The position numbers and the translations under genes are program-made. Positions 14,502-49,270 of a stretch of DNA of 64,000 bases are shown here, piece by piece. The DNA lies in the IMG/VR virus record IMGVR_UViG_3300027759_000045, positions 62,001 to 126,000 of that record. The stretch is one strand, 5' to 3'. The notes beneath the pieces are model-generated. The model saw only the letters and a list, made by a program, of their open reading frames with translations. It did no database searches and was not told the origin of the DNA. Within the stretch, counting starts at the first letter, position 1; every line of letters starts with the position of its first letter.

Positions 14502-14530
14502 TTGCAAAATCTAAATAAACCATATACAAT
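14502..14530 (+). promoter_or_regulatory. sigma70 promoter with nested TAAATA late-type motif
   Basis: TTGCAA-N17-TACAAT; TAAATA at 14512-17. Confidence 0.65.
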
Positions 14531-14550
14531 ACACAATAGGAGAATTAAAC

Positions 14551-15273: not shown

Positions 15274-15482
15274 TGGAAACTAAAAAACGCACAGTGGTCA
15301 GGATGCTGACTTATCGTCTGACTGCATGGCTATTTACAATCTTTTGGACTTATATGTTCACAGGCAACATTGCCAATGCCACAGGTTTTGCTACTGCACT
15401 ACATATTCTTTTAAGTGTTGACTATTACATACATGAACGAATCTGGCTCAAAATCAAATGGGGCAGAATTGACTCAAGATAA
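15273..15482 (+). CDS. DUF2061-like small membrane protein
   Basis: ETKKRT...YR...YYIHERIW.KIKWG pattern with two hydrophobic segments. Confidence 0.75.
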   Translation: METKKRTVVRMLTYRLTAWLFTIFWTYMFTGNIANATGFATALHILLSVDYYIHERIWLKIKWGRIDSR

Positions 15483-17037: not shown

Positions 17038-17570
17038 ATAGAGAAGGACACGAAAATGTTAAGTTTTTCACAGGTGTAGAAGTAGAACATACTCCTGCCT
17101 ATGACAAGAAAACATTATTTGTAGTAGGGTTACAGCCAGTCAGTGAAATTCAAGATTGGATAGATGATTTTGCCGCCTATGAAGATGCCGCACAGCACAT
17201 TGAGCACATTTACTTTGGTGCCAATCAGAGCTTTCCTAATCTAAAAGTCAATGACGGTGCTGAGTGGGCCAAGTGGGAAACTATGATTTACCACTTCCTA
17301 GATCGAGACTATGTCTGCACATTAGATGTAGATGTGTCAAGTGTCGAAGGTTTAGTCGAAGGCGGATTTTGTGAACGTCACAACTTCATTCCGATGATTT
17401 CAGTAAAATTACCCTATGTACAACTGCTAGGATACAATGCTACAATCAAGTTAGACGATAAAGATTTTTCAGCCACCAACCCCGGTGTTTGGTGCCATAG
17501 TTTGCATACGTTACAAAATCGAAACAAATTCACTCCATGGTCTAAATACACAAAGGACAAAACAATATGA
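17034..17570 (+). CDS. hypothetical protein coupled between dpdA and dpdL
   Basis: ORF overlapping both neighbours by 4 nt; HIYFGANQSF. Confidence 0.85.
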   Translation: MNREGHENVKFFTGVEVEHTPAYDKKTLFVVGLQPVSEIQDWIDDFAAYEDAAQHIEHIYFGANQSFPNLKVNDGAEWAKWETMIYHFLDRDYVCTLDVDVSSVEGLVEGGFCERHNFIPMISVKLPYVQLLGYNATIKLDDKDFSATNPGVWCHSLHTLQNRNKFTPWSKYTKDKTI

Positions 17571-18025
17571 CACAACGAGAACAAGCACTAGCAGAGCAGG
17601 CTATTAGAATTATGGGTAGTGCGGAACGTAAAATTTGGGTCACGTTCCGCAAAGAAGGGATCCACAAATATCCCGCGGCAGCAACAGACCCTTCATTAGC
17701 AACAGGAGATGAATATGATGTATCGTTTTTGGGCTATCCTCATCGCCATATTTTTCATTTCAGGGTTTGGATTGACGTATTCCACAACGACCGAGATGTG
17801 GAATTTATACAATTCAAGCGATGGCTCGAAAAACTGTATTCTAGCAACCAAGGTGTATTGTCGCTAGATTACAAAAGTTGTGAAATGATCAGCGATGATC
17901 TGTACTTACAAATTGCCGCACGTTACCCCGACCGTGCAGTCTGGATCGAAGTGGCCGAAGATGGCGAGAACGGCGCTTTGATCAAATATGAAATTTCTCG
18001 TCCTAGTCTTAACATTAAAATTTAA
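17567..18025 (+). CDS. dpdL: QueD-paralogous T-fold protein, DpdL-like (putative CDG decarboxylase)
   Basis: LGYPHRHIF fits the LxxxHRHxF motif I recall for DpdL; also DRDVEFI and SCEMIS (T-fold pattern). Confidence 0.65.
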   Translation: MTQREQALAEQAIRIMGSAERKIWVTFRKEGIHKYPAAATDPSLATGDEYDVSFLGYPHRHIFHFRVWIDVFHNDRDVEFIQFKRWLEKLYSSNQGVLSLDYKSCEMISDDLYLQIAARYPDRAVWIEVAEDGENGALIKYEISRPSLNIKI

Positions 18026-18036
18026 AAGGATTTACC

Positions 18037-18258
18037 ATGGGTAAACAAGCAGTGTATTCTAACCCCAAGGCCCAGGCCGCGCAGGATGAGCTGGATCGTT
18101 TTCTAGACTTCTGCCGCGATTTTGGATATCGCTTTAACGAAGCAGACTTGTATAACTTCAAGAGTTATGCATGGCAACAATACAACAAGTTTTCACAGGG
18201 CAAGAATGCTCGTGACATGTGGGCCGAGGATGCTCGTCGTTTGAATAGACCTATCTAA
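18037..18258 (+). CDS. hypothetical protein, 73 aa
   Basis: ORF with AAGGA RBS. Confidence 0.75.
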   Translation: MGKQAVYSNPKAQAAQDELDRFLDFCRDFGYRFNEADLYNFKSYAWQQYNKFSQGKNARDMWAEDARRLNRPI

Positions 18259-18259
18259 C

Positions 18260-19462
18260 ATGAGAAAACTATACTACATGGGCCTAGAAAGTTACGAAGC
18301 CCGTTACACACTACAACTTACAGAATGGAACCGACGTGTGTTTGACCGTAGAGGTCTTGACGTGGTTTACGTTCCTGGTACAACTATTGATAACAGCCAA
18401 GCAATCAGCGTAGGCCAAGTGCTGGACGCACACGGACGCAGTTACTTTGGCATGAGTCAGATGATGAACTTGGTTCAGATGATGCGTCGAGGTGAAGTTA
18501 CTGGGGAAGATGTTATCTACTTTGAAGACATGTTTCAACCTGGCATCGAGTCCTTGCCATATATATTTGATCAGATTCCTGCTGACCAGCGTCCCAGGGT
18601 ATATGTACGCTGTCTAGCCCAGAGTATTGATCCCGATGACTTTGTGCATGTATGGGGCATGGCCAAGTGGATGGGCCTGTACGAACACATGGTCAATGAG
18701 TTTGTCACCGGAGTTCTCGCCACAAACGAAGAGATGGTTGCTCACATGCGCATTGCCGGATGGCGTGCTCCTATATACAATATTAGTGGCTTGGCATTTG
18801 GTAAAGAAGAAGTGCTAGAGCGCATCGGTGGTGCAGAGAATATCCGACCATTTGGTGAACGCAAACGTCGTGTAGGATTTGCCGCACGATTTGACCAAGA
18901 GAAGCAACCAGACTTCTACATGGACTTGATTGAAATGTATGGCCAGTTGACCAAAGAACCGTGCGAGTTTGCCATCTTCTCTGGTGGTCCTTTACGCAGT
19001 AACAACCCCAAGTATCTTGAACGTGCTAGAATGTACGAACAAGAAGGCAAGTTAAAAATTTATGATAATCTAAGCAAAAATGACTACTATAATCTTGTTA
19101 ATGATACTCGGGTGCTATTCAATTGTGCTTTACAAGACTGGGTATCCAATACTGTTTCTGAAGCCGATACTCTTGGGTGTAATGTGTTATATCCTGCTTA
19201 TCGTAGTTTCCCCGAGACATTCGCTAATGACCCTAATAGGCTCTACGTGCCTTGGAGCATAGATGATGCCTATCACAAGATGCAAAACTTATTGCGCGAT
19301 CCGCATCACAACATGGGCTTGATTTCAGATTGGAACGACGGCACCATTGATCGCGTTATTGACGTCATGACCGGACAAGGCGAGCAATGGAATCGTGCAG
19401 GCAATCGTTATCGCGACCATACTGCACACGAAAAATATCAAGTGAGAAGAATAGAAGAATGA
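18260..19462 (+). CDS. GT-B glycosyltransferase (GT4 / phage DNA glucosyltransferase-like)
   Basis: GFAARFDQEKQP...DWVSNTVSEADTLGCNVLYP (Ex7E-like motif). Confidence 0.75.
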   Translation: MRKLYYMGLESYEARYTLQLTEWNRRVFDRRGLDVVYVPGTTIDNSQAISVGQVLDAHGRSYFGMSQMMNLVQMMRRGEVTGEDVIYFEDMFQPGIESLPYIFDQIPADQRPRVYVRCLAQSIDPDDFVHVWGMAKWMGLYEHMVNEFVTGVLATNEEMVAHMRIAGWRAPIYNISGLAFGKEEVLERIGGAENIRPFGERKRRVGFAARFDQEKQPDFYMDLIEMYGQLTKEPCEFAIFSGGPLRSNNPKYLERARMYEQEGKLKIYDNLSKNDYYNLVNDTRVLFNCALQDWVSNTVSEADTLGCNVLYPAYRSFPETFANDPNRLYVPWSIDDAYHKMQNLLRDPHHNMGLISDWNDGTIDRVIDVMTGQGEQWNRAGNRYRDHTAHEKYQVRRIEE

Positions 19463-19656
19463 CGCCTCGGGAACAAAGTTTCTGCTATCTCAAGCAGTAT
19501 ATTTGTGCTCAAACAACCGCTCCTTGGATTGCCAAAATGAACGACGTAGAAGATCGGGCTCGTTGTGCGTTACAGCACTTGGGTGGCATGGCAGGAGATT
19601 GGTATCCGTATCGTCATGAATGCCAGTACTATTATCCACAAAGGAAACAAGAATGA
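19459..19656 (+). CDS. hypothetical protein, 65 aa
   Basis: ATGA overlaps at both ends. Confidence 0.55.
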   Translation: MTPREQSFCYLKQYICAQTTAPWIAKMNDVEDRARCALQHLGGMAGDWYPYRHECQYYYPQRKQE

Positions 19657-20597
19657 ATGTAGTAGTCACCGGCTCAGCCGGATACATTGGCGGGCAAGTT
19701 GCCTTGCAGTTGAAAGACGCAGGGCATACAGTTTTGGGCATTGACCGTAGACCTTTGCAGCCACATCAAAAAGGTCTACTTGATAGTTTTGTACTGGCAG
19801 ACTTTGATAGTGATACAGCATTTAAAAAGTTATTAAACGTGCGGCCTGATGCCATTGTGCATTGTGCAGGCACCAGTCTGGTTGGCCCTAGCATTAAGAA
19901 TCCAAGTGAGTACTACTTTAACAATGTGGCCAAGACACTGGAGTTGATTACTTTCATAACACGGGCCATGCCTCGGACTAGAATTATCTTTAGTTCTAGT
20001 GCGGCAACCTATGGTGAACCTGTGATGAATCCCATCTGCGAAGTGGATCCAACCGAGCCAGTCAGTCCATATGGACAAAGTAAACTGATGATTGACATGA
20101 TGTTAGAATCGTATCGCCGGGCATACGGGCTTGACTATGTTAGTTTCCGCTACTTTAACGCATGTGGTGCGGATCCCCGAGCCAGACACGGACAAGAACC
20201 CGGCGCTACACACATCATTGCTCGAGTGTTAGAAAGTATTAGAGATGATCAAGAGTTCACACTTTACGGTGATAACTATCCTACCGCAGATGGCACTTGC
20301 ATTCGAGACTATGTACACGTGGATGATATTGCTCGTGCTCATGTGTTGGCGTTGGATCAAACAATTCCTGCAGGCATTTACAATCTTGGGTCAAACACAG
20401 GCACTAGTAATCGTGAAATTATTGCGGCAGCCGAACGTATCACAGGTAAGACATTAAAGTTTACAATAGGAGAACAACGTGTGGGCGATCCTCCTATGCT
20501 GACAGCCAGTGCAGATAAGTTTAATGCTGTGGCCGGTACATGGCAATTGCATAATTTAGATGACATGATTCGTCATGCCTGGGCCTGGTATGTTTGA
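19653..20597 (+). CDS. galE: UDP-glucose 4-epimerase
   Basis: TGSAGYIG, FSSSAATYG, SPYGQSK, RYFNACGAD, DGTCIRDYVHV. Confidence 0.92.
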   Translation: MNVVVTGSAGYIGGQVALQLKDAGHTVLGIDRRPLQPHQKGLLDSFVLADFDSDTAFKKLLNVRPDAIVHCAGTSLVGPSIKNPSEYYFNNVAKTLELITFITRAMPRTRIIFSSSAATYGEPVMNPICEVDPTEPVSPYGQSKLMIDMMLESYRRAYGLDYVSFRYFNACGADPRARHGQEPGATHIIARVLESIRDDQEFTLYGDNYPTADGTCIRDYVHVDDIARAHVLALDQTIPAGIYNLGSNTGTSNREIIAAAERITGKTLKFTIGEQRVGDPPMLTASADKFNAVAGTWQLHNLDDMIRHAWAWYV

Positions 20598-21186
20598 TAA
20601 AATTCTACAATTTGAACAAGCACTAGCAGAGTTTACTGGTGCCCCATATGTGGTCATGACCGATTGCTGTACACACGCCATTGAACTGTGCTTACGTTAC
20701 GACCAAGTTACAGAGTGTAGGTTTACTCCGTACACTTACTTGAGCATCCCAATGACCATGCACAAGCTGGGCATCAAATACAAACTACTAGACCACGAAT
20801 GGCAACGCTGGGTCGGTGAATACCCATTTCTCGAAACACGTATCTGGGATTCAGCACGTAGACTTGAAAAGGACATGTACCGCGAAGGTACAATGCAATG
20901 TTTGAGTTTTGGGCATGGCAAACCTTTGCAGATCGGACGTGGCGGAGCAATCTTGCTAGATGATGTTGTTGCATACGATACCATGTTGGCTCAAAGGTAC
21001 GATGGTAGAGATTTGACTATTACGCCATGGGAATCGCAACAGGTGTTCCGAGTGGGGTATCATTACAAACCCACAATCGAAGAAGCTGTACAAGGACTTG
21101 CACTACTCGAAGGTGTCAAACAAAATCGGCCCGTGCCAATACCGGTTGATTACCCAGATTGCAGAAAAATAACTATTGTTCCTTGA
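20590..21186 (+). CDS. short DegT/DnrJ/EryC1/StrS-like PLP aminotransferase
   Basis: FEQALAEFTGAPYVV..DCCTHAIEL...WDSA...LSFGHGKPLQIGRGGAI. Confidence 0.7.
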   Translation: MFDKILQFEQALAEFTGAPYVVMTDCCTHAIELCLRYDQVTECRFTPYTYLSIPMTMHKLGIKYKLLDHEWQRWVGEYPFLETRIWDSARRLEKDMYREGTMQCLSFGHGKPLQIGRGGAILLDDVVAYDTMLAQRYDGRDLTITPWESQQVFRVGYHYKPTIEEAVQGLALLEGVKQNRPVPIPVDYPDCRKITIVP

Positions 21187-21211
21187 CACTGACCTAAATA
21201 CCCTGTATAAT
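21183..21211 (+). promoter_or_regulatory. consensus sigma70 promoter with nested TAAATA
   Basis: TTGACA-N17-TATAAT; TAAATA at 21195-21200. Confidence 0.9.
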
Positions 21212-21252
21212 AACACAATGGCAATCCACTGCCTTAACATCGGAGACTATGA

Positions 21253-22083
21253 TTGAAAAAAGAATTTGCACCAGATCCAGTATTTCACTCGGATACTAAA
21301 AAGAAGTTTATACCAGACCGCCTGGACCACAATGCCACAGAGCCATCCCCAATTACCACAGCAACTGAAATTATGTCAGACAAAGATTACCAAGAAGGTT
21401 ACCTAGGCGATGCCATTCGCTTTAAGATGAAACGTGACAACAAACGTTTCTGGGCAGGCGATAATATCAGTGACTACCTGCACGAAGGTGATCGAGAACG
21501 ACTAATTGACGAAGCCTCAGAAGCATTTGAGACAGTGCTGGATCGGTTGTTGATCGATCGTGAAACAGATCCCAACTCAAAAGGCACAGCAAGACGTTTG
21601 GCCAAAATGTACTTTAATGAAATAATGGCAGGAAGATATGAACCAGAACCAGATGCAACCGCTTTCCCTAATGACTCAGCGGATCGATATGAAGGAATGC
21701 TTGTGGTGCGTAGTGAGCTTCGCAGTATGTGCAGTCATCACCACCAACCTGTCAGTGGCGTTGCTTATATCGGGATTATTGCCGCTCAAAAGCTCATTGG
21801 CCTTAGCAAGTACACTCGTATTGCTCAGTGGTGTGCTCGTCGTGGCACACTACAAGAAGAACTTGCTAATGACATTGCCCGCGAGATAATGCGGGCCACA
21901 GATGCCACAGACGTTGGTGTGTATATTCAAGCAGTGCATGGATGTTGCGAGAATCGCGGCATCATGGCACATAGTAGCCTCACACAGACCACAGTGCTTA
22001 AAGGTGCGTTTAACACAGATCAAAGTACAAAGAAAGAATTCTTTGACAATATCAAACTACAACAGGACTTTGCTCCACGATGA
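21253..22083 (+). CDS. folE: GTP cyclohydrolase I
   Basis: [30 protein letters not shown]; TTG start after GGAG. Confidence 0.95.
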
Positions 22084-22412
22084 CCTATGTTGTAACTGAC
22101 GACTGCATTTTATGCAAACACACAGACTGTGTTGATGTGTGTCCTGTGGATTGCTTTGTAGAAGGTCCAAACTTTTTGGCCATCAATCCGGATGAGTGCA
22201 TTGACTGTGCAGTGTGCGTTCCAGAATGTCCGGTAAATGCAATTTATGCTGAAGAGGATCTACCGGAAACGCAACGTGCATTTACAGTCATCAATGCTGA
22301 ACTGGCAAAGCTATGGCCTGCTATTACCAAAAGTAAGGCACCGCTGCCAGACCATGAAAAATGGACCAACGTGCCCGATAAACTACAGTACCTAGACCGT
22401 GGCACAGCGTAA
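22080..22412 (+). CDS. fdxA: 7Fe ferredoxin (FdxA type)
   Basis: [18 protein letters not shown]...[12 protein letters not shown]. Confidence 0.93.
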
Positions 22413-22998
22413 AAACTTTGTTGTCTACGGACACGGGAGAACCGGCAGCCACTGGGTTGAATCAATTCTAATCGGATTGTTGGCACCAACTTCATTCCGG
22501 TATTCAAACTGTTCTCTTTTGCCCGACGGCTGGATATATCACACCAACCACATTCAAGAGTTATTGGAAATACCTCGAGAGATACGAGATTCTGTCACAT
22601 TGATTGTGTGTGATAGGTCAAATTATTTTGATGCGGCCGTCAGTTACAATGTAGCAAAACATACAGATGAATTTTTTACTTACACAGATACCCCAGTGGC
22701 GCCATTCAATGTGGATCCTGACGACTTTACAAATTTATTAAATGCACAGCACCATACATATCAATTGGTTGGTTCAGAAGTCATACCAAGGTACAACAGT
22801 GTGATACGCATCGACTACGACAGTTTGGTAGCTGCCGCTGTTCCGGAAAAGTATGTGGCCGACCAATTGGGTGTTGATTACACAGTAAATTCCGAGTACA
22901 CGCACCAAAGTGTTAAAAACCCAAGAAATTACAAAGATTTAATTTTAAATTGGGAAGAATTGTACCAACTTTATCAAGAATGGCTAGTTGACCACTAA
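22399..22998 (+). CDS. sulfotransferase-like P-loop protein
   Basis: [17 protein letters not shown]-binding-like motif. Confidence 0.65.
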
Positions 22999-23016
22999 TT
23001 CTTAATTTGTTATAAT
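22988..23016 (+). promoter_or_regulatory. sigma70-type promoter
   Basis: TTGACC-N17-TATAAT. Confidence 0.75.
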
Positions 23017-23050
23017 ACGTGTACATTGAACAACTCTTGGTGGAAATATT

Positions 23051-24295
23051 ATGCGCTTTATTATTAGCACAATTGGACTGGTTTTAGTCCTAGCTAGTTG
23101 TAGCGGTTGTGGCGGAGGCGGTGGTGGTGGCACCACACCCACAACGATGGTGCAGTCTGCAACTGCATCATCCTGTGTTGTTAAACCTGTAATAGGCTCT
23201 GACAAATACCGCAGTGCAATCATGGACATGCGATTTGAACAGTACACCGATTTCACTGCCGATGGCAAATTGGTGGCATCGTATGATGCTGTGTCTCGAG
23301 TCATTGATAAGATTGATTGTGTTGGATTTAATACAATTGTTTTTCAGACCAATATTCCCATTGACGTCAAAACTGGGCATTTAGAATTGTATGACTCAAG
23401 CCCGGTGGCCTACAACCGTGATAAGAATATACCTAAGGATTTTTGGCGATTGGTCAAGTACTCTAAAGACCAAGGACTCCGTGTGTTTATCAAAGCAATT
23501 CCAGTCAATCACATCACAGATTCAACCATCTGTCCCAGCTGTACCAGTTCTGAATTTGCATTGCCGCCTACATTCTCCACTGCAAATTTCTTTAACACGT
23601 TAGTCTCGTATCAACGAATCTTGGCCACAGAAGCAGAGAAATACAAAGTGGATGGGTTTTACATCGGAACCATGAACCTCGGGCTTGACACAACCCCTTA
23701 CATGGCCAACTGGGACAACGTTATAGCTCAGATCAAAACTGTGTACACAGGTAAATTGATTTACGAATCCTGTGATCGTTGTACCACACCAGTATGGAAT
23801 CGAGTAGATCTTGTTGCAGTGCATGTTGGCGCTCAGGTAACCAAATCCTCTGCCACCACAGTGGCCAGCTTAATCAACGATACTCAGATATTTAATTTGA
23901 TTGTTGATATTCAGCGCATTGCTACTCTATACCAGAAACCAATTTTGTTAGATACCATCATGATTGGAGCAACAGGTAAAGATTATGACTATGGCAGCAT
24001 CACCAGTGGGCAAACTCCGTACACAAGCCTACAGCCCAATTATGAATTGCAAGCTGTGAAAATTGCCACAGTGTTTGAATTGCTTGGCTCCAAACTCCCC
24101 AAACAAGTAGTGGGGGTGCAATGGTCAGAATACATGCCATGGAGCCAGGCTGCCTGGATACAAAATCCCACCAATACTACATCGTGGACCTGGCATCATG
24201 TTCAGTTCTATGGAATTGATTTGTTAAACAACAAGTCAGCACAAAATAAATTGTCTGAATATTTTGCTAAGCCATGGGGCTACACAGTTAACTAA
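23051..24295 (+). CDS. lipoprotein with GH113-like TIM-barrel domain
   Basis: signal peptide with lipobox (VLASC), Gly/Thr linker, AEKYKVDGFYIG...IKTVYTGKLIY...KPIL pattern. Confidence 0.6.
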   Translation: MRFIISTIGLVLVLASCSGCGGGGGGGTTPTTMVQSATASSCVVKPVIGSDKYRSAIMDMRFEQYTDFTADGKLVASYDAVSRVIDKIDCVGFNTIVFQTNIPIDVKTGHLELYDSSPVAYNRDKNIPKDFWRLVKYSKDQGLRVFIKAIPVNHITDSTICPSCTSSEFALPPTFSTANFFNTLVSYQRILATEAEKYKVDGFYIGTMNLGLDTTPYMANWDNVIAQIKTVYTGKLIYESCDRCTTPVWNRVDLVAVHVGAQVTKSSATTVASLINDTQIFNLIVDIQRIATLYQKPILLDTIMIGATGKDYDYGSITSGQTPYTSLQPNYELQAVKIATVFELLGSKLPKQVVGVQWSEYMPWSQAAWIQNPTNTTSWTWHHVQFYGIDLLNNKSAQNKLSEYFAKPWGYTVN

Positions 24296-24305
24296 AGGAT
24301 CAACT

Positions 24306-24725
24306 ATGAGTTTACCGCACACAAAAGAAATCATTCCGGGAATCGGCCCAGAGATTAATAAACAACTTGCACCGTGGACTGAACTGGTTCGAGAGGACTT
24401 TCATGTTCAAGTATTTGAAGATATCTATCCTGTGACTCCGGGACACTTGTTATTCGTACCTAAATACAACACAGTAGGTGTGCTGATGGATGCTGTACAA
24501 GATGCAATCTATCACGGGCAGGCGCAGGTCGAATCGGGTGCCTGGGATGGATTTAACATTGGATTAAACTATGGTTCGGCAGCCGGGCAGACAGTGCCTT
24601 GGCCACATGTACACTTGATTCCTCGTCTGACAGGTGATGTTGCTGACCCTATTGGCGGTGTCCGAAATACAATTCCCGGGCAAGGTAACTATCGCACAGG
24701 TAGTTATAAACACCCCAATGCGTAA
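24306..24725 (+). CDS. HIT family nucleotide hydrolase
   Basis: DIYPVTPGHLLFVP...GFNIGLN.G.AAGQTVPWPHVHLIPR. Confidence 0.9.
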   Translation: MSLPHTKEIIPGIGPEINKQLAPWTELVREDFHVQVFEDIYPVTPGHLLFVPKYNTVGVLMDAVQDAIYHGQAQVESGAWDGFNIGLNYGSAAGQTVPWPHVHLIPRLTGDVADPIGGVRNTIPGQGNYRTGSYKHPNA

Positions 24726-24800
24726 TACAATAAATATTTCTTTACAACATCAAACTTCAACAAGAATTTGATCCTCAATGGGTTATTAAGAAAATAATAA

Positions 24801-25652
24801 ATGGACTATACAATACATCAAAACGGCTGGACAGTTATGTTGGGTGATCAGTTCAGCTTCAAGACTGCCACCCAAGACAACATCAACGAAATAGCACGCC
24901 TGCTTGCATCAAACACCTTGGTAGTTGCCAAAAAACAAAACTTGACAGTTCAAGAAGAGTTGCGTGTTATCAACATGTTCAAGGATCCTGAGGCCGCGCC
25001 TGAACAGTTGCCAATGGCTCGACGATTATGTGTTCCTGACACACAAGGCAAGATAGTTAGAGTAACTGGCGAACTTGATGAACACGGAGAACCTGGACTG
25101 TTTGGTCATGTCAGCGATCTTGATTGGCACTGTAACAAACCAGCTGTGCCCGATCGCAGACCAATTGTGTGGCTGTATGGAGTAAAAGGCACAGCTGGTT
25201 CCAGAACGTCATGGAACAACAACATACTGTCTTACCAAGATCTTGAACAAGACACTAAAAATCTGTTGGATCCGTTGGAGGGAATATTTGGATACGAAAA
25301 CGGGCGCTATACTGACATGCAATTTGAGAATGTTCCAACAAAAAGTATCAACACCCACTACACTCCAAAAATTGTTACCACAAATATTGCAGGCAAGAAA
25401 GGGCTGTTTTTTCCTTTCTTGCAGTTGTTCTATTTCAAAGGAATGAGCGAGGAAGATAGTATCAAGATTATTGATCCAATCAGCCAACATATTACACAGG
25501 ATAAGTACTGTTATCATCATGACTGGGATGATGGAGACGTTGTGATTGCCGAGCAAGTGCTAGGCATACACAAAAGATGGGCGTTTGACGGTATGCCGAA
25601 CAGGGTACTACATCGAGCTACCATGCAATTCCCAGATCAAATATATCAGTGA
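24801..25652 (+). CDS. TauD/TfdA-like 2OG-Fe(II) dioxygenase
   Basis: DWHCN...YHHDWDDGDVVI....IHKR...RVLHR. Confidence 0.8.
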   Translation: MDYTIHQNGWTVMLGDQFSFKTATQDNINEIARLLASNTLVVAKKQNLTVQEELRVINMFKDPEAAPEQLPMARRLCVPDTQGKIVRVTGELDEHGEPGLFGHVSDLDWHCNKPAVPDRRPIVWLYGVKGTAGSRTSWNNNILSYQDLEQDTKNLLDPLEGIFGYENGRYTDMQFENVPTKSINTHYTPKIVTTNIAGKKGLFFPFLQLFYFKGMSEEDSIKIIDPISQHITQDKYCYHHDWDDGDVVIAEQVLGIHKRWAFDGMPNRVLHRATMQFPDQIYQ

Positions 25653-25656
25653 TCTC

Positions 25657-25722
25657 AGCGGCCTGTTCGGCATCATCCCGCTTTACAAACTCTGCTGCCT
25701 ATGCTATAATTAACATAGGAGA
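25657..25722 (+). promoter_or_regulatory. candidate riboswitch-like leader of queD
   Basis: AGCGG/CCGCT stem; loop GGCA complementary to TGCC; alternative CCTATG/CATAGG hairpin sequesters the SD. Confidence 0.4.
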
Positions 25723-25727
25723 AAATA

Positions 25728-26234
25728 ATGGCACAATTTGAATCAGTACAATACAAATACACTTCTACCAAGGAGTATCACGATGCGTTTCCCTGCGCAT
25801 ATCGGCAATGGCGAGCAGACAGTCACTGTAATCTAATTCACGGTTACAGCTTCAGTATGAAGTTCTACTTTGGTACTAATGACCTAGATGTGCGTAACTG
25901 GGCCGCTGACTACGGTGGGCTTAAAGAGCTCAAGAAGACCTTGGAAGATCAATTTGATCATACATTGATTGTGGCAGCGGATGATCCTGAAATGGCCACA
26001 TATAACTTGTTGGTAGAAAAGAAAATGGCCAAGGTAGTTGTGTTACCAAAATTAGGATGTGAAGGTCTCAGTGACATGCTGTACAAGTATGTGAATGGGG
26101 TTTACGTTCCAGAAATGTGGGGACCCGGAGAGGCCACTCGTTTGTGGTGCTATCGTGTAGAAGTGCGTGAAACACAAGCCAACATGGCGTATCGTGAAGG
26201 GCATCGTGAATGGAATGAGGATCTGTTTGCGTGA
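25728..26234 (+). CDS. queD: 6-carboxy-tetrahydropterin synthase / PTPS family
   Basis: SHCNLIHGYS...DYGGLKELK..LEDQFDH...VEVRET. Confidence 0.88.
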   Translation: MAQFESVQYKYTSTKEYHDAFPCAYRQWRADSHCNLIHGYSFSMKFYFGTNDLDVRNWAADYGGLKELKKTLEDQFDHTLIVAADDPEMATYNLLVEKKMAKVVVLPKLGCEGLSDMLYKYVNGVYVPEMWGPGEATRLWCYRVEVRETQANMAYREGHREWNEDLFA

Positions 26235-26851
26235 ACTTGTTTGTAACCGGTGGCAGTTCTGGTGTTGGTCAAGCATGTGTAGAACTGTTTGATCAATACA
26301 CAATTACAGCACCAACAAGGAACGAACTAGATTTGTCTGACTTTGAAGCAATAGCTCAATTGGATTTATCTCAGTACGATATTGTTATCAACTGTGCAGG
26401 TGCCAATGTAGGTGCATTTCGGGGCTGGCAAGATAATACTTGGCAAAATCAGCAAAATCAAGTTGATGTAAACTTCACTGGTGCATTGCTGTTGGCCAAG
26501 CAATACGTTAAGCAACGTGCCACCGGACATTTCATTTATATCACCAGCAGTAACATCGATGATCCCATTGTGTATAACATATTTTACACTGCTGCCAAGG
26601 CCGCACTGCATTACAGTATGAATACAGTGAAGAAACAGTATCCCGATGTGCTCTTTACAGAAATCAGGCCTGGTAAAATACGTAGTAATATGTTAAATCA
26701 AAATTATCAAGGTGCAAAAACTCCTGATGAAATCGAAGAACTCTATGCCAAAGGGCCTGCACTGGCACCTGCAGATATTGCCGAGGCCATTGCGACTGCT
26801 ATTAAATACAAGATAGAACAAATCACAATAACTCCCCATGACAAATCGTGA
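26231..26851 (+). CDS. short-chain dehydrogenase/reductase
   Basis: VTGGSSGVG, INCAG, YTAAK. Confidence 0.9.
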   Translation: MNLFVTGGSSGVGQACVELFDQYTITAPTRNELDLSDFEAIAQLDLSQYDIVINCAGANVGAFRGWQDNTWQNQQNQVDVNFTGALLLAKQYVKQRATGHFIYITSSNIDDPIVYNIFYTAAKAALHYSMNTVKKQYPDVLFTEIRPGKIRSNMLNQNYQGAKTPDEIEELYAKGPALAPADIAEAIATAIKYKIEQITITPHDKS

Positions 26852-42328: not shown

Positions 42329-42420
42329 GGAAGATGATGCAGCGGGGTTGGTCCTGCGACTGGCCTTGAAAACCAGGTTCTCTTAACAGGGATGGGGTTC
42401 GACTCCTCCGTCTTCCGCCA
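42329..42420 (+). tRNA. tRNA-Ser(TGA), 8/4 fold
   Basis: 8-bp acceptor GGAAGATG/CGTCTTCC, 4-bp T stem, long variable arm, G73, loop CTTGAAA. Confidence 0.85.
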
Positions 42421-42775: not shown

Positions 42776-43318
42776 ATGAAAGATTTAATATTAATCGCAT
42801 TGAAAGAAGAAGCACCCAACATAGCTTTCAGTATGAAAGTTTTTTTCACTGGGGTAGGAAAAGTAAATGCCGCAATGACTACAGCTGAAATGATTGCTAA
42901 GTACCGCCCCGATCGTATTATCAACTTTGGTACAGCTGGTGGAGTCACTGTTAAGTCAGGATTTCACCAAGTGACCAAGTTTATACAACGTGACATGATG
43001 TGCTGTGAGTTGGGTAGTCTGCCAGGTCAAACACCATTCGAAGATGGTGTTGTTTTAGATTTTGGCAAGGGGTTGACCTGCAGTACAGGTGATAACTTTG
43101 TTACTGATAGTAATCTATTGATACCAGCCGACGTAGTGGATATGGAAGCATACGCTATAGCAAAGGCATGTAAAAAACATAACGTAGAATTTTTATGTTA
43201 CAAGTTTGTTAGTGATGGTGCTAATGAAGATTCATTAAATGATTGGCGCACAACTGTTAGTCAAGGGCAACTTCACTATCTAAATAAACTTAAAGAATTA
43301 AATGTATCTCTGGTGTAA
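42776..43318 (+). CDS. mtnN: 5'-methylthioadenosine/SAH nucleosidase
   Basis: ALKEE, TGVGKVNAA, NFGTAGG, STGDNF, VDMEAYAIAKAC, KFVSD. Confidence 0.9.
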   Translation: MKDLILIALKEEAPNIAFSMKVFFTGVGKVNAAMTTAEMIAKYRPDRIINFGTAGGVTVKSGFHQVTKFIQRDMMCCELGSLPGQTPFEDGVVLDFGKGLTCSTGDNFVTDSNLLIPADVVDMEAYAIAKACKKHNVEFLCYKFVSDGANEDSLNDWRTTVSQGQLHYLNKLKELNVSLV

Positions 43319-43377
43319 TGGCAGCACCGCGGTCTCCAAAACCGTCAGTCAAGGTTCGAGTCCTTGGAGGTACGCCA
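43304..43377 (+). tRNA. tRNA-Trp(CCA)
   Basis: GCGGT-CTCCAAA-ACCGT; 5' end overlaps the mtnN stop. Confidence 0.9.
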
Positions 43378-43382
43378 GTTTA

Positions 43383-43456
43383 GCTCTTATAGTATAATGG
43401 CATTACATGCCCTTGGTAAGGGTAAAACACAAGTTCAATTCTTGTTAAGAGCACCA
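43383..43456 (+). tRNA. tRNA-Thr(GGT)
   Basis: TGCCC-TTGGTAA-GGGTA. Confidence 0.88.
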
Positions 43457-43460
43457 AATA

Positions 43461-43579
43461 ACCCTACAGTGAGCAGGGTATACTAAAGTACTAAGTTGAC
43501 CATTTAATGCCGTTTTGCTATAATAGAAACAAGTTAAGAAATTAGCTGGATCTGCAAATAACCCTACACAGTGTAGGGT
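43461..43579. repeat. two 19-bp palindromic sites 100 bp apart
   Basis: ACCCTACAGTGAGCAGGGT (43461-79) and perfect ACCCTACAC-A-GTGTAGGGT (43561-79), both preceded by AAATA. Confidence 0.75.
43496..43524 (+). promoter_or_regulatory. sigma70 promoter (first of tandem pair)
   Basis: TTGACC-N17-TATAAT. Confidence 0.85.
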
Positions 43580-43593
43580 GTTTGCAAAACAAA

Positions 43594-43622
43594 TTGACTA
43601 GATATAGCCATTGTGTTATACT
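43594..43622 (+). promoter_or_regulatory. sigma70 promoter (second of tandem pair)
   Basis: TTGACT-N17-TATACT. Confidence 0.8.
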
Positions 43623-43627
43623 AGAGA

Positions 43628-43661
43628 CTAGTTAGGAAATTAACTAGACGTTCTTTAAAAA
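43628..43661 (+). promoter_or_regulatory. boxB-like hairpin plus boxA-like antitermination signal
   Basis: CTAGTTA-GGAAAT-TAACTAG then CGTTCTTTAAAAA. Confidence 0.6.
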
Positions 43662-43691
43662 GTTATTGTTTTTGGTAACCCGCAAGGGTTG

Positions 43692-43906
43692 CTATTTTAA
43701 AATGTATTAAAGGTTACCTACACCGTTAGGGATCTAAGGCGAGGACAGTGGGGCCGCCCACGCTCAAGCTAGGTCTATGAAACCGGGCAGAAATGTCCAG
43801 AAAAGCGGCGGAGCATGTAGGCAGTAATGACCGTGCAGGCCTATAGCAGACGGTGCTATAGGTAGACATAGATGCACAATGGTTCCTTTAGTATGTTTTA
43901 AAATAG
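43692..43906 (+). ncRNA. unidentified ~215-nt multibranched RNA
   Basis: 22-bp closing stem with three G-U pairs and at least five internal helices. Confidence 0.65.
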
Positions 43907-43913
43907 TAGAATT

Positions 43914-43989
43914 TGGTCTGTTCGTATAGAGGTTATTACTGTGGATTGTCTATCCACTTACGGGGGTTCGATTCCCCCACAGACCGCCA
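43914..43989 (+). tRNA. tRNA-Asp(GTC)
   Basis: GTGGA-TTGTCTA-TCCAC; G73. Confidence 0.92.
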
Positions 43990-43995
43990 AGTTTT

Positions 43996-44060
43996 GAGAG
44001 TCACATCGCCTGGACACTTCCTTTGGTAACGAAGCACTAGGTCCTGCAACCGTGGCTCTC
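43996..44060 (+). ncRNA. 65-nt rod-like structured element
   Basis: GAGAGTCAC/GTGGCTCTC, CCTGG/CTAGG, CTTC/GAAG nested. Confidence 0.4.
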
Positions 44061-44068
44061 CCCTTTTT

Positions 44069-44143
44069 GCTCGATTCGTCTATCGGTTAGGACATCTGGT
44101 TTTCATCCAGGCAAGAGCGGTTCGATTCCGCTATCGAGTACCA
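44069..44143 (+). tRNA. tRNA-Glu(TTC)
   Basis: TCTGG-TTTTCAT-CCAGG. Confidence 0.92.
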
Positions 44144-44144: not shown

Positions 44145-44343
44145 ATCCCGTTACTATTTTCGTTAAAATAGCGTTTGATTAGCGATAGAGATCCGGTGGC
44201 AGAAGACCGTAAGTGTAGGGCTGGAAACTACCCCTCGGAATCTGATAGGCAGTATCCTTCTGCACACAGACATTAGAATAAAAAGGATGGACAGAGTAAC
44301 CGCTCAATTAAGGGCTGGCATGGAAACCAGTAGCTTATCCTAA
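44145..44343 (+). ncRNA. unidentified structured RNA domain A
   Basis: no ORF; CTATTTT/AAAATAG, GCAGAAG/CTTCTGC, CTGG/CCAG, GGAT/ATCC. Confidence 0.55.
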
Positions 44344-44346: not shown

Positions 44347-44431
44347 GGAGATGCCGCCGTAATGGTATGGCAGGAGACTGTAAATCTTCCGACTTCGGTC
44401 ACAACAGGTTCGATCCCTGTCATCTCCACCA
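44347..44431 (+). tRNA. tRNA-Tyr(GTA)
   Basis: GGAGA-CTGTAAA-TCTTC, long variable arm. Confidence 0.92.
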
Positions 44432-44432
44432 G

Positions 44433-44630
44433 AACCCGCCGGGGTAACGCCTGGCTAGTATGACCCGTACGAGAGAAGTGAGTTCGTTACTCAAGGGTGG
44501 TAGTCTTCTTACCAAAAGGCCGCTGGCAATGCGATAACGGTTCCTGTCGGGAAGCGGGTGGAAGGTACGAGTGAGGGGTATGATAGCGTCATATCTTTCT
44601 GTACTATAATTACCGCCGGGGGATGCAGAG
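44433..44630 (+). ncRNA. unidentified pseudoknotted RNA domain B
   Basis: GC-rich non-coding stretch, at least five hairpins, and a long-range GGTGGTAGT(44496-504)/ATTACCGCC(44609-17) pairing. Confidence 0.6.
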
Positions 44631-44635
44631 CATTT

Positions 44636-44711
44636 GGGGGATTGGTATACTTGGCTAACACACCTGGTTTGCAACCAGGAGCAAACGGTTCGAATCCGTT
44701 ATCCTCCACCA
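44636..44711 (+). tRNA. tRNA-Ala(TGC)
   Basis: CCTGG-TTTGCAA-CCAGG; G3-U70. Confidence 0.92.
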
Positions 44712-44730
44712 TTTTATAAAAGGAAATTGT

Positions 44731-44874
44731 ATGAAACGTAAACCGATCGTGCGCGAACGTAACTGCTTCGTTCGTCTGGCACTGTTCCGCAAAGCAGGTG
44801 CGCATCGCAAGAGCAACAAGGCTCTGCGTCGAGCACAAAAACAAAGCCCATTAGGGGGTGAAACTTTAAGGTGA
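44731..44874 (+). CDS. small very basic protein, 47 aa (MKRKPIVRERN...FRKAGAHRKSNKALRR...)
   Basis: AAGGA RBS; 3' end overlaps tRNA-Lys. Confidence 0.55.
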   Translation: MKRKPIVRERNCFVRLALFRKAGAHRKSNKALRRAQKQSPLGGETLR

Positions 44875-44927
44875 AGTAACGGACTTTTAATCCGTAAAAC
44901 AGGGATCGTTCCCCTGCACCCCTACCA
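44854..44927 (+). tRNA. tRNA-Lys(TTT), non-canonical T loop
   Basis: ACGGA-CTTTTAA-TCCGT; T arm CAGGG-ATCGTTC-CCCTG. Confidence 0.87.
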
Positions 44928-45048: not shown

Positions 45049-45783
45049 ATGAAAATTAAACTACCTCAAGAATTGCACTGGTTCTGCCCAGTGGCAGCAC
45101 CTGACCTAATTAGATTAGGTGGAAAAATGGATGGTGGCTACATTGTGCCACGTTCAGCAGTGGAACAAGCACAGGGCCTGCTGAGTTTTGGACTGGGTGA
45201 CGATTTTACATTTGACCAAGACTGGCATGATCTCAAGCCCCAGGATCCAATTCAGATGTATGACGCCAGTGTTACCAGAGATACCATGCGTATCAGCATC
45301 AATACGCCGGTTCGCGGACATCTGGACATTCGAACCATGTACGATGAATTCTTTCAGGGCAATGTAAAACATTGGCCAGAGTTTATTGGTCCTGAGAACT
45401 TTGTTCGAGCCCTGGACAGAATGGGCGTGGATCAAGTGTTTATTAAAATGGATATCGAAGGTGGCGAATACAGTTTGATTGAAAGTATTTTACAACATCG
45501 AGATCGTATCGTGGGTGTCGCAATGGAATGGCATAACTGTGCAAATCGTAGCGAGCAATGGCGCCGAGCTGTGCAACGCTGGCAAGAGCACTATGCTATA
45601 GTACATGTACACGGAAATAACCATGTGGGATTTGATTCAGATGGTGTGTTTGGATGTATGGAACTGACACACATTCGCCGAGACTTGGTTCCTGGAAATG
45701 AACTGCGTAAAGAGTCTTACATACACGGTTTAGATTATTCTAACGTGGCTGGTCTTACTGATATTGAATACTATTTTGATTAA
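45049..45783 (+). CDS. FkbM-like methyltransferase
   Basis: LIRLGGKMDGGY, LSFGLGDD, FIKMDIEGGEY, HVHGNN. Confidence 0.75.
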   Translation: MKIKLPQELHWFCPVAAPDLIRLGGKMDGGYIVPRSAVEQAQGLLSFGLGDDFTFDQDWHDLKPQDPIQMYDASVTRDTMRISINTPVRGHLDIRTMYDEFFQGNVKHWPEFIGPENFVRALDRMGVDQVFIKMDIEGGEYSLIESILQHRDRIVGVAMEWHNCANRSEQWRRAVQRWQEHYAIVHVHGNNHVGFDSDGVFGCMELTHIRRDLVPGNELRKESYIHGLDYSNVAGLTDIEYYFD

Positions 45784-45786
45784 TTT

Positions 45787-45862
45787 GGTGATGTAGCTTA
45801 GACGGTAGAGCAATTGCTTCATACGCATTAGGTCGGTGGTTCGATACCACCCATCACCACCA
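45787..45862 (+). tRNA. tRNA(CAT), elongator Met or Ile2
   Basis: loop TTCATAC; paired 1:72, so not initiator; identity unresolved. Confidence 0.8.
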
Positions 45863-45872
45863 AACAAATAAT

Positions 45873-45948
45873 GCGGCTGTAGCTCAGTTGGTAGAGTACT
45901 TGCTTGCCAAGCAAGACGTCACCGGTTCGAACCCGGTTAGCCGCTCCA
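45873..45948 (+). tRNA. tRNA-Gly(GCC)
   Basis: CTTGC-TTGCCAA-GCAAG; U73. Confidence 0.94.
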
Positions 45949-45959
45949 ACATTTATTAC

Positions 45960-46033
45960 TGGGGGTTAGTGTAGCGGTAACACTACAGACTTTGACTCTG
46001 TCATCACTGGTTCGATCCCAGTACCCTCTGCCA
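45960..46033 (+). tRNA. tRNA-Gln(TTG)
   Basis: ACAGA-CTTTGAC-TCTGT; unpaired 1:72, G73. Confidence 0.92.
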
Positions 46034-48849: not shown

Positions 48850-49270
48850 ATTGCTGTATGAAGCAAAGAGAAAAGTGTTCTGGACGGGGGTGCGAATCCC
48901 CCCAGGTCCACCAAAAAGACTTTTACCCTAGACCGCAAGAGCCAACTACATGTTGCGGAAAAGGATGTGAAGGATGTGTCTGGATTAGCTATTTTGAAGC
49001 ACTAGCTAGATGGGAGAGTCTTTTTGGAGGGCCTGACCTAGATTCGACAGGGCAACAAGTAAATTAGTGGACAGCTCGGGAATGTGAAACCCGTAGGGTT
49101 GGGGAGACTCGGCCGAAGAAGCAAAAAACGTAAATGCAAACGTAAACAAAACCGTAACTGTTTCAGGCAAGAATATCAAGTTCTCTGCTCGTTCAGCCAA
49201 GGAAGCATTGGCAGTCTAAACACTGCCTAGGGTTTTTGGTAATTTATCCTCGTAACAGAATTAAATTACC
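48850..49270 (+). ncRNA. ssrA: circularly permuted two-piece tmRNA
   Basis: acceptor piece first (T arm GGGGG-TGCGAAT-CCCCC, CAGGTCC-A-CCA ending 48913); coding piece from GGGCCTGAC..ATTCGAC at 49029 with G3-U70; tag ANVNKTVTVSGKNIKFSARSAKEALAV at 49136-49219; 5' end approximate. Confidence 0.9.
48858..49067 (+). CDS. Oxidored-like (CC..GC..CVW..Y) small protein nested in the tmRNA gene
   Basis: PRPQEPTTCCGKGCEGCVWISYFEALARWE encoded in the tmRNA spacer. Confidence 0.5.
   Translation: MKQREKCSGRGCESPQVHQKDFYPRPQEPTTCCGKGCEGCVWISYFEALARWESLFGGPDLDSTGQQVN

What the first reader, a model, noticed from the sequence alone, without database searches (positions are those of the whole stretch)
43461..43661. 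rRNA-operon-like control region: tandem promoters followed by boxB-boxA
Seen: two sigma70 promoters 98 bp apart, then a 7-bp hairpin with a GGAAAT loop, then CGTTCTTTAAAAA, then long processing-type stems. Known: bacterial rrn operons have tandem P1/P2 promoters and a boxB-boxA leader (consensus near TGCTCTTTAACA) that recruits NusB/NusE/NusG/SuhB. Inference: the phage borrows the host stable-RNA antitermination machinery for its ncRNA/tRNA block.
Basis: partly seen in the sequence, partly recalled or inferred. Interest (0 to 1): 0.65.

Follow-up and report, generated by a model that had tools for sequence, protein, structure and literature searches.

The report
Phage tRNA operon with rrn-style boxA leader
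An uncultured 347-kb lake phage starts its main tRNA and small-RNA operon with the same promoter, hairpin and boxA leader that bacteria use for ribosomal RNA operons, so it probably recruits the host's Nus factors, and over a hundred related environmental phage contigs carry the same leader.

Summary

- **Elements present:** P1 (43496-43524), P2 (43594-43622, 98 bp later), a 7-bp hairpin with loop GGAAAT (43628-43647), GTTCTTTAAAAA (43650-43661), and a 24-bp leader-trailer stem (43690-43713 / 43885-43908) around a conserved structured RNA.
- **boxA match:** The 12-mer fits the published functional boxA consensus GYTCTTTAANA perfectly. The same 12-mer follows a consensus promoter and a hairpin, 117-190 nt before 16S, in rrn operons of Zoogloea, Sutterella, Arenicellales and other proteobacteria.
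- **Spread in phages:** Of 133 distinct promoter-boxA modules, 122 have a same-strand tRNA within 1.5 kb. Chance matches without a promoter have one in 3 of 54 cases.
- **Uniqueness:** In the whole 347-kb genome, only P2 among the promoter-like sites scoring at least 10 of 12 carries boxA.
- **No phage Nus genes:** The phage encodes no NusB, NusG or S10.
- **RNA evidence:** A lake metatranscriptome contig covers the boxA leader and the RNA behind it.

Nus binding and its effect remain untested, and the host is unknown. This is a new variant of a known mechanism.

The parts
43461..43479 (+). Imperfect hairpin (ACCCTAC..GCAGGGT) just upstream of P1. It is the first element of repeat unit 1.
   Evidence: Sequence. 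Flagged as terminator-like on the minus strand. In relatives L005, L069, L128 and L503 the same place holds a canonical terminator with a T-run.
43496..43524 (+). Promoter P1: TTGACC-17-TATAAT with an extended -10 TG.
   Evidence: Scores 11 of 12. Conserved in 12 close relatives.
43532..43547 (+). 5' hairpin of the P1 transcript: AGTTAA-GAAA-TTAGCT, one G:U pair. No boxA follows it.
   Evidence: Sequence. Aligns with the P2 hairpin in the tandem duplication. Conserved in relatives.
43561..43579 (+). Hairpin ACCCTAC-ACAGT-GTAGGGT between P1 and P2. It is the first element of repeat unit 2.
   Evidence: The stem covaries in relatives: CCTTC/GAAGG and CCCTA/TAGGG.
43594..43622 (+). Promoter P2: TTGACT-17-TATACT with an extended -10 TG.
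   Evidence: Scores 10 of 12. Conserved. RNA contig cover starts near it: 43636-43827 in X16.
43628..43647 (+). boxB-position hairpin at the 5' end of the P2 transcript: 7 bp, loop GGAAAT.
   Evidence: In leaders fetched without specifying a hairpin, 68 of 77 have one and 30 have GNRA loops. Stem positions 2-5 of the 30 GNRA-loop hairpins are paired in 0.958 of cells against 0.664 after shuffling.
43650..43661 (+). boxA: GTTCTTTAAAAA, the predicted NusB-S10 binding site.
   Evidence: Perfect match to GYTCTTTAANA. Identical 12-mer in rrn leaders of proteobacteria. Conserved upstream of the small RNA in 31 of 55 independently anchored relatives, against 1.3 in shuffles. It is the only such match behind a promoter in the genome.
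43662..43689 (+). G/T-rich spacer followed by a small GCAA hairpin (43675-43692).
   Evidence: The hairpin covaries in alignment A2. There is no match to the boxC consensus UGUGUGGG.
43690..43908 (+). Conserved structured RNA of unknown family. A 24-bp leader-trailer stem (43690-43713 / 43885-43908) encloses a core of about 170 nt.
   Evidence: Fold z-score -4.05. In 14 homologues, 75 consensus pairs, 35 of them with compensatory changes. No Rfam family. Its 19-mer is found in 82 IMG/VR stretches. RNA contigs lie on it.
43915..44143 (+). tRNA-Asp (43915-43989) and tRNA-Glu (44069-44143).
   Evidence: ARAGORN and Rfam.
44146..44333 (+). Spacer RNA 1. It is very abundant in lake metatranscriptomes.
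   Evidence: Word depth of 12,505-26,396 in three RNA runs. Contigs lie at 44175-44313. No Rfam family.
44347..44431 (+). tRNA-Tyr.
44432..44635 (+). Spacer RNA 2. It is abundant in lake metatranscriptomes.
   Evidence: Depth up to 14,324. Contigs lie at 44490-44565 and 44545-44635.
44636..44927 (+). tRNA-Ala (44636-44711), a small basic ORF (44731-44874) and tRNA-Lys (44854-44927).
   Evidence: The ORF has no family match.
45049..46033 (+). A 244-aa ORF with a weak FkbM-type methyltransferase match, then tRNA-Met, tRNA-Gly and tRNA-Gln. This is the probable far end of the P2 unit.
   Evidence: No plus-strand terminator follows. No RNA cover on the ORF.

Best explanation
This is the leader of the phage's main stable-RNA operon, built like a bacterial rrn leader.

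1. Host sigma-70 RNA polymerase starts at P2. It may also start at the duplicated upstream P1.
2. The first roughly 20 nt of the transcript fold into a short hairpin in the boxB position.
3. Two nucleotides later, boxA (GTTCTTTAAAAA) emerges and is bound by the host NusB-S10 dimer. Together with NusG, NusA and SuhB, this converts the polymerase into a processive complex like the one on rrn operons.
4. That complex carries transcription through about 2.4 kb of mostly untranslated RNA without Rho-dependent or pause-driven loss. This stretch holds a 220-nt structured RNA, eight tRNAs and two abundant spacer RNAs.
5. Because boxA stays held near the RNA exit channel, the complex may also help the 24-bp leader-trailer stem close around the structured RNA, ready for processing.

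Shown here: the elements themselves, their conservation and covariation, their link to tRNA arrays, their identity with real rrn-leader boxA, and RNA cover of the leader.

Inferred: Nus binding, the effect on termination or folding, and processing by RNase III and RNase P.
For: - Elements and spacing are in the sequence.
- The 12-mer is a perfect match to the functional consensus GYTCTTTAANA.
- The pattern 'consensus promoter, 10-40 nt, this 12-mer' in bacterial genomes returns rrn leaders with a hairpin, boxA, TGTGTGGG and then 16S, mostly 120-190 nt later. A 16S start was found in 33 cases. Rfam confirmed 16S and 23S in four of them.
- With the promoter and hairpin fixed, most of the 84 distinct modules are followed by GTTCTTTAAAAA or a near variant.
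- With the promoter and boxA fixed, 68 of 77 leaders hold a hairpin, and the stems of the 30 with GNRA loops covary.
- 122 of 133 modules have a same-strand tRNA within 1.5 kb, and 60 have one within 100 nt.
- Control: 26 of 26 matches with a promoter have a downstream tRNA, against 3 of 54 without a promoter (Fisher p = 5e-18).
- Anchoring on the downstream RNA instead of boxA, 31 of 55 upstream regions hold boxA 61-70 nt upstream, against 1.3 expected. Variation falls mainly at positions 5 and 10, and position 10 is the N of the consensus.
- In the whole genome only P2 has boxA. Promoters of protein genes run straight into a ribosome-binding site.
- The phage has no NusB, NusG or S10.
- An RNA contig at 43636-43827 covers the leader.
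- PMC10250234 describes the rrn design: boxB-boxA-boxC after P2, a leader-trailer helix, and boxA as necessary and sufficient.
Against: - No binding or genetic data exist for this element.
- The host is unknown, so a match to its own rrn boxA is not shown.
- No boxC consensus is present.
- 24 of 55 homologues of the downstream RNA sit directly behind a promoter without boxA. Three other tRNA clusters of this genome also lack it. boxA is therefore not needed for tRNA expression as such.
- The hairpin also occurs without boxA, at P1 and in 26 'TGCGGTG' modules.
- Cultured capsid relatives (PA5oct, GAP32, CBB, Vibrio phage 2.275.O, Phosso) lack the module.
- According to the text read, E. coli rRNA is intrinsically Rho-resistant. 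The benefit may therefore lie in folding rather than in resisting Rho.
- Contigs cannot define transcript starts.
Confidence: 0.7

Rival explanations
1. It is a nut-like site for a phage-encoded N-type antiterminator. A small arginine-rich phage protein would bind the GNRA-type hairpin and, together with boxA-bound Nus factors, make the polymerase terminator-resistant, as in lambda.
For: The hairpin loop is often GAAA or GCAA closed by A-U. Lambda N binds a GNRA-like boxB loop (introduction of PMC10250234). The hairpin is conserved even where boxA is absent.
Against: - The order is hairpin then boxA, as in rrn, not boxA then boxB as in nut sites.
- In the unbiased set, only 30 of the 68 hairpins have GNRA loops, and the other loops differ widely.
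- Bacterial rrn leaders with this same boxA have the same layout without any N.
- No N-like gene was identified. No dedicated search was possible, because such proteins are short and poorly conserved.
Confidence: 0.1
2. The elements determine RNA stability and processing and do not load Nus factors. The 5' hairpin would protect the transcript from 5'-end-dependent RNase E or RppH attack, and the A/U-rich 12-mer would be a cleavage or spacer signal for maturation of the downstream RNAs.
For: The hairpin starts within a few nucleotides of the expected start site. It occurs at P1 and in other modules without boxA. In 60 modules a tRNA begins only about 16 nt after the 12-mer.
Against: An A/U-rich cleavage site would not need 12 nearly invariant positions, nor match GYTCTTTAANA exactly. 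The same 12-mer holds the same place in rrn leaders. The hairpin part of this reading is compatible with the main explanation.
Confidence: 0.12
3. The palindrome at +1 to +20 is a DNA operator for a repressor, and the 12-mer is part of its flank.
For: It is an inverted repeat that overlaps the start site.
Against: The centre is asymmetric and of the GNRA type on the transcribed strand. Stems change sequence freely while keeping pairing, including G:U pairs. The 12-mer is not palindromic.
Confidence: 0.03

Closest known systems
Bacterial rrn operon leader (E. coli rrnB type): P1-P2, boxB-boxA-boxC, leader-trailer helix, rrnTAC
   Same: - Tandem sigma-70 promoters.
- A hairpin followed by boxA just after the downstream promoter.
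- A boxA sequence within the functional consensus, identical to that of several proteobacterial rrn leaders.
- A long covarying leader-trailer stem around a structured stable RNA.
- tRNAs co-transcribed.
   Different: - The enclosed RNA is about 220 nt and of unknown family, not 16S.
- There is no boxC consensus.
- There is no second boxA further down the operon.
- The element is carried by a phage.
- The upstream promoter is a recent duplicate of the downstream one and lacks boxA.
Lambdoid nutL/nutR sites (N-dependent antitermination)
   Same: It is a phage RNA element combining boxA with a short hairpin, and it uses host Nus factors.
   Different: - The order of the elements is reversed.
- No N protein was identified.
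- It controls a stable-RNA operon, not delayed-early protein genes.
- The boxA here is the full rrn type, not the shorter lambda form.
boxA outside rrn: the suhB 5' UTR (Baniulyte et al. 2017, bioRxiv 10.1101/091223) and CRISPR-array leaders (Stringer et al. 2020, cited from my own knowledge; related papers listed)
   Same: A consensus boxA sits just behind a promoter. In the CRISPR case it protects a long untranslated array from premature Rho termination.
   Different: Those elements are chromosomal. This one is viral, heads tRNA and small-RNA arrays, and is paired with a conserved 5' hairpin.
Phage T4 tRNA gene cluster with stable RNAs 'species 1 and 2' (from my own knowledge)
   Same: It belongs to a T4-type phage (Gp23 capsid). 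tRNAs and small stable RNAs of unknown function are co-transcribed and then processed.
   Different: To my knowledge, no boxA leader is described for T4.

Membership tests
rrn-type boxA / Nus-factor loading leader | RNA-strand sequence matching the functional boxA consensus GYTCTTTAANA | tested here: met
   GTTCTTTAAAA(A) at 43650-43661. The consensus was read.
rrn-type boxA / Nus-factor loading leader | Lies in the transcribed leader shortly after a promoter, on the sense strand | tested here: met
   It lies 27 nt after the -10 box of P2. An RNA contig at 43636-43827 covers it.
rrn-type boxA / Nus-factor loading leader | boxB hairpin immediately 5' of boxA (rrn order) | tested here: met
   A 7-bp hairpin lies 2 nt upstream. 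68 of 77 unbiased leaders have a hairpin, and the stems of the 30 with GNRA loops covary.
rrn-type boxA / Nus-factor loading leader | boxC (UGUGUGGG-like) about 18-19 nt after boxA | tested here: not met
   Only a G/T-rich stretch (GTTATTGTTTTTGG) is present. The bacterial hits do carry TGTGTGGG.
rrn-type boxA / Nus-factor loading leader | Long leader-trailer helix enclosing a stable RNA | tested here: met
   A 24-bp stem, 43690-43713 with 43885-43908, with compensatory changes in 14 homologues.
rrn-type boxA / Nus-factor loading leader | Heads an untranslated stable-RNA unit | tested here: met
   The unit holds a small RNA and eight tRNAs. 122 of 133 modules in relatives precede tRNAs, with a control.
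rrn-type boxA / Nus-factor loading leader | Same boxA as the host's own rrn leader | tested here: inconclusive
   The identical 12-mer is found in rrn leaders of Zoogloea, Sutterella, Arenicellales and Bacterioplanoides, but the host of this phage is unknown.
rrn-type boxA / Nus-factor loading leader | Bound by NusB-S10; Nus- and boxA-dependent processivity | not testable with these tools
   This needs binding and reporter assays. The phage itself has no NusB, NusG or S10.
Lambdoid nut site | boxA 5' of boxB | tested here: not met
   The hairpin precedes boxA.
Lambdoid nut site | boxB loop of GNRA-like fold recognised by N | tested here: inconclusive
   The loop here is GGAAAT. In relatives, GAAA and GCAA tetraloops are common but not universal.
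Lambdoid nut site | Phage-encoded N-type protein | not tested
   No search was run. N proteins are too short and too variable for the family scans used here.

The most novel reading that the evidence does not exclude
The locus may be a miniature rrn operon. A large clade of uncultured T4-type jumbo phages from lakes and seas would load the host Nus complex onto polymerase for two purposes. One is to outrun Rho. The other is to act as a co-transcriptional chaperone that closes a leader-trailer helix around a new, widespread class of structured phage RNA, which is then released with the tRNAs and two highly abundant spacer RNAs. boxA-driven stable-RNA factories would then be a general phage strategy, and the enclosed RNAs a new family with an unknown role in infection.
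Probability: 0.35. Interest if true: 0.78.

Novelty: new variant of a known kind. Interest (0 to 1): 0.62.

Why it matters
Outside rrn operons, boxA is known from lambdoid nut sites, a few mRNA leaders and some CRISPR arrays. Finding a full rrn-type leader at the head of tRNA and small-RNA operons in over a hundred environmental phage contigs has three consequences.

- It suggests that large phages carrying their own translation-related RNAs also secure the expression of those RNAs by taking over the host's stable-RNA transcription machinery.
- It gives a simple sequence marker for such operons.
- boxA variants could serve as a host-range clue for uncultured phages.

It also frames three unknown, expressed small RNAs for study. 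The claim can be tested directly with standard NusB-S10 binding assays and read-through reporters in laboratory strains.

Tried and rejected
- **GenBank phages:** blastn of 43300-44000 hit only tRNAs. A neighbouring 429-aa ORF had no tblastn match.
- **Synteny walk:** Starting from the PNP-like gene 42776-43318 gave 31 loci, but only one held the region, because gene order is shuffled.
- **Rfam:** No family matches the structured RNA or the spacer RNAs at E up to 10.
- **Phage-encoded factors:** No NusB, NusG, S10 or RNase III in the phage.
- **Cultured capsid relatives:** Vibrio phage 2.275.O, PA5oct, GAP32, CBB and Phosso have GYTCTTTAANA matches but none with a promoter, hairpin and tRNA context. 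They also lack the small-RNA 19-mer.
- **ArfA idea:** The idea that ORF 44731-44874 is ArfA-like found no Pfam or NCBIfam support.
- **Spacer RNA folds:** The two abundant spacer RNAs do not fold better than shuffles (z = -0.43 and -1.75).
- **DNA operator reading:** Considered and rejected, because the loop is an asymmetric GNRA type and the stems covary.
- **Literature:** Searches found no report of boxA in phage tRNA operons.
- **Not attempted:** A covariance model of the leader or the RNA was not built. The formal pair count on a typed 356-column structure was left out to avoid typing a long string; the RNAalifold pair table stands in for it.

Full report
**Setting.** The window is bases 62001-126000 of a 346,856-bp IMG/VR virus record with direct terminal repeats. 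It is rated 100% complete and has 43.6% G+C. It encodes a T4-type Gp23 capsid protein (E = 8e-98). The nearest cultured relatives by capsid are jumbo phages: Sinorhizobium phage Phosso, Vibrio phage 2.275.O, Pseudomonas phage PA5oct, and Cronobacter GAP32 with its group, at 64-72% identity. The window carries 26 tRNA genes and a permuted tmRNA. DNA runs that hold the stretch are lake and freshwater metagenomes.

**Observation.** All elements are present.
- P1 is TTGACC-17-TATAAT at 43496-43524.
- P2 is TTGACT-17-TATACT at 43594-43622. Both promoters have a TG extension.
- A 7-bp hairpin, CTAGTTA/TAACTAG with loop GGAAAT, lies at 43628-43647.
- GTTCTTTAAAAA lies at 43650-43661.
- A 24-bp stem pairs 43690-43713 with 43885-43908, around a G+C-rich core. 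The fold z-score is -4.05.

The two promoters belong to a tandem duplication of about 100 bp. Each unit is an upstream hairpin, a promoter and a GAAA-type hairpin. Only the second unit is followed by the 12-mer. Twelve close relatives keep this tandem layout. In some of them the hairpin before P1 is a canonical terminator with a T-run.

Taken alone, the promoter-like sites and the 12-mer are not beyond chance in the window. The case rests on comparison.

**Is the 12-mer a boxA?** It matches perfectly the consensus GYTCTTTAANA, which Baniulyte et al. derived from functional E. coli boxA elements.

I scanned bacterial genomes for 'TTGACA, 16-17 nt, TAYAMT, 10-40 nt, GTTCTTTAAAAA'. It returned many rrn leaders with the layout promoter, hairpin, this 12-mer, TGTGTGGG, then 16S, mostly 120-190 nt later. 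They come from Zoogloea, Sutterella, Arenicellales, Succinivibrionaceae, Bacterioplanoides and unnamed gammaproteobacterial MAGs. A 16S start was found in 33 cases. Rfam confirmed 16S, 23S and spacer tRNAs in four of these loci. The phage therefore carries a boxA that real proteobacteria use, in the rrn order of elements described in PMC10250234.

**Conservation in phages.**
- A first hint came from two distant relatives, where only the hairpin-boxA stretch matched by BLAST.
- With the promoter and the hairpin GTTGAGAAATCAAC fixed, most of the 84 distinct modules continue with GTTCTTTAAAAA. The variants are GTTCTTTAACAA, GTTCTTTATACAA, GTTCATTAAAAA and GTTGTTTCAAAAA. A second class of 26 runs into an RNA starting TGCGGTG, without boxA.
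- With the promoter and boxA fixed, 68 of 77 distinct leaders contain a hairpin, and 30 of those have GNRA tetraloops. In these 30, stem positions 2-5 are paired in 0.958 of cells, against 0.664 (maximum 0.783) after shuffling the 3' arms.
- As a test that does not use boxA, I scanned for a 19-mer of the downstream structured RNA and found 82 stretches. Of the 55 distinct upstream regions, 31 hold the 12-mer with at most two mismatches, 19 of them exact, usually 61-70 nt upstream. Shuffles give 1.3 (maximum 4). Flanking positions are 32-55% conserved. Variation within boxA sits mainly at positions 5 and 10, and position 10 is the N of the published consensus.
- The other 24 homologues have a promoter directly in front of the RNA and no boxA.

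**What does the module drive?** Of 133 distinct promoter-boxA modules with enough downstream sequence, 122 have a same-strand tRNA within 1.5 kb. Sixty have one within 100 nt, typically starting 16 nt after boxA. In the scan that did not require a promoter, 26 of 26 matches behind a promoter have a downstream tRNA, against 3 of 54 matches without one (p = 5e-18).

In this genome, the promoter-like sites scoring at least 10 of 12 were checked on both strands. Only P2 carries boxA. Promoters of protein genes run straight into a ribosome-binding site. Three short, tight tRNA clusters have a promoter directly before the first tRNA. GYTCTTTAANA occurs six times in the genome against 2.3 expected, and only the copy at 43650 has a promoter and a hairpin in front of it.

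The P2 unit is the long one, with long untranslated spacers. It holds, in order:
- the structured RNA
- tRNA-Asp and tRNA-Glu
- a 200-nt spacer
- tRNA-Tyr
- a 200-nt spacer
- tRNA-Ala
- a 47-aa ORF
- tRNA-Lys
- a 244-aa ORF
- tRNA-Met, tRNA-Gly and tRNA-Gln

**The RNA behind boxA.** Fourteen homologues at 70-97% identity align well. RNAalifold gives 75 pairs, 35 of them with compensatory changes. These include the 24-bp closing stem and several internal helices with conserved loops. No Rfam family matches. The layout is boxA, then a long leader-trailer helix around a stable RNA, then tRNAs. This mirrors pre-16S rRNA, where boxA-bound Nus factors are thought to hold the leader near the exit channel until the trailer emerges.

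- One contig covers 43636-43827, which is the leader with boxA plus the RNA.
- Others cover 43738-43900.
- The interval between P1 and P2 (43488-43581) has no cover in three runs and 1.6 in the fourth.
- The 244-aa ORF has no cover except at its extreme 3' end in one run, so contaminating DNA is unlikely to explain the signal.
- The two spacers, 44146-44333 and 44428-44615, reach summed depths of thousands to 26,000.

Contigs cannot fix transcript ends, and the depths include close relatives.

**Factors.** The phage has no NusB, NusG, S10 or RNase III. Any Nus-dependent action and any cleavage of the stem must therefore use host proteins.

**Mechanism and rivals.** The best reading, with confidence about 0.7, has three steps.
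1. Host RNA polymerase starts at P2.
2. The 5' hairpin forms.
3. boxA recruits host NusB-S10 and the other Nus factors, and the modified polymerase transcribes the stable-RNA array processively.

A possible second role is in closing the leader-trailer helix. Whether the gain is resistance to Rho or better folding is open, because E. coli rRNA itself was reported to be intrinsically Rho-resistant.

The hairpin may be a 5' end protector rather than a true boxB, since it also occurs without boxA. The rivals are an N-type phage protein acting on the hairpin (0.10), a pure stability and processing signal (0.12), and a DNA operator (0.03).

**Novelty.** I found no report of boxA leaders on phage tRNA operons. 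Cultured relatives lack the module. The mechanism is of a known kind. What is new is its use by a widespread uncultured phage clade, its miniature rrn architecture, and the unknown RNAs it drives.

Noticed in passing
window 43690-43908: A conserved structured RNA of unknown family. A 24-bp closing stem surrounds a core of about 170 nt with invariant motifs such as GGTTACCTACACCGTTAGG. It occurs in 82 IMG/VR stretches and has 35 covarying pairs. In 24 of 55 homologues it sits directly behind its own promoter, without the boxA leader.
   Followed up: partly
window 44146-44333 and 44428-44615: The two 'spacers' between tRNA-Glu, tRNA-Tyr and tRNA-Ala are among the most abundant RNA contigs in three lake metatranscriptomes, with summed depths up to about 26,000. 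They match no Rfam family and fold no better than shuffles.
   Followed up: partly
window 44731-44874: A 47-aa, very basic ORF with a ribosome-binding site runs 21 nt into tRNA-Lys (44854). RNase P cutting at the tRNA 5' end would therefore remove its stop codon. The phage also carries a tmRNA. An ArfA-like role was considered, but no family match was found.
   Followed up: partly
window 48852-49219: A permuted (two-piece) tmRNA gene scoring 104.7 bits in Rfam. This type occurs in alphaproteobacteria, in some betaproteobacteria and in some cyanobacteria, so it is a possible host clue.
   Followed up: no
L156-L260 (for example L159:11519-11600): 26 distinct marine and lake modules have the same consensus promoter and the GTTGAGAAATCAAC hairpin. 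They run directly into a conserved RNA starting TGCGGTG..CCCTT..GGTTCAGGAG, with no boxA. This is probably another phage small RNA.
   Followed up: no
L361, L393, L397, L409, L463: In the contigs of L361 (Omnitrophota), L393 (Planctomycetales), L397 and L409 (unclassified bacterial MAGs) and L463, the same promoter-boxA pattern is followed within a few bases by a tRNA gene, not by 16S. boxA-led tRNA operons therefore also exist in bacteria.
   Followed up: no
L549:1501, L551:1394, L558:1501: Cronobacter phage GAP32 and Pectobacterium phage CBB carry a conserved GCTCTTTAAAA behind a weak promoter-like site near their genome ends. In CBB it is present at both genome ends. No tRNA lies nearby.
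   Followed up: no
L379:2678-2744: A phage-type module (promoter, GTTAAGAAATTAAC hairpin, boxA) sits on a 7.5-kb contig binned into a Crocinitomicaceae MAG. This is probably phage DNA caught in the bin and not reliable evidence of the host.
   Followed up: no
window 42329-42416: A sub-threshold match to tRNA-Sec (36.6 bits, gathering score 47) lies just before tRNA-Ser 42425. ARAGORN did not call it.
   Followed up: no
L213, L235, L287, L313, L314, L320, L321, L331: In several relatives two complete promoter-hairpin-boxA modules stand in tandem, 90-400 nt apart. Tandem promoters therefore recur in the clade. In the window, the upstream copy has lost boxA or never had it.
   Followed up: partly
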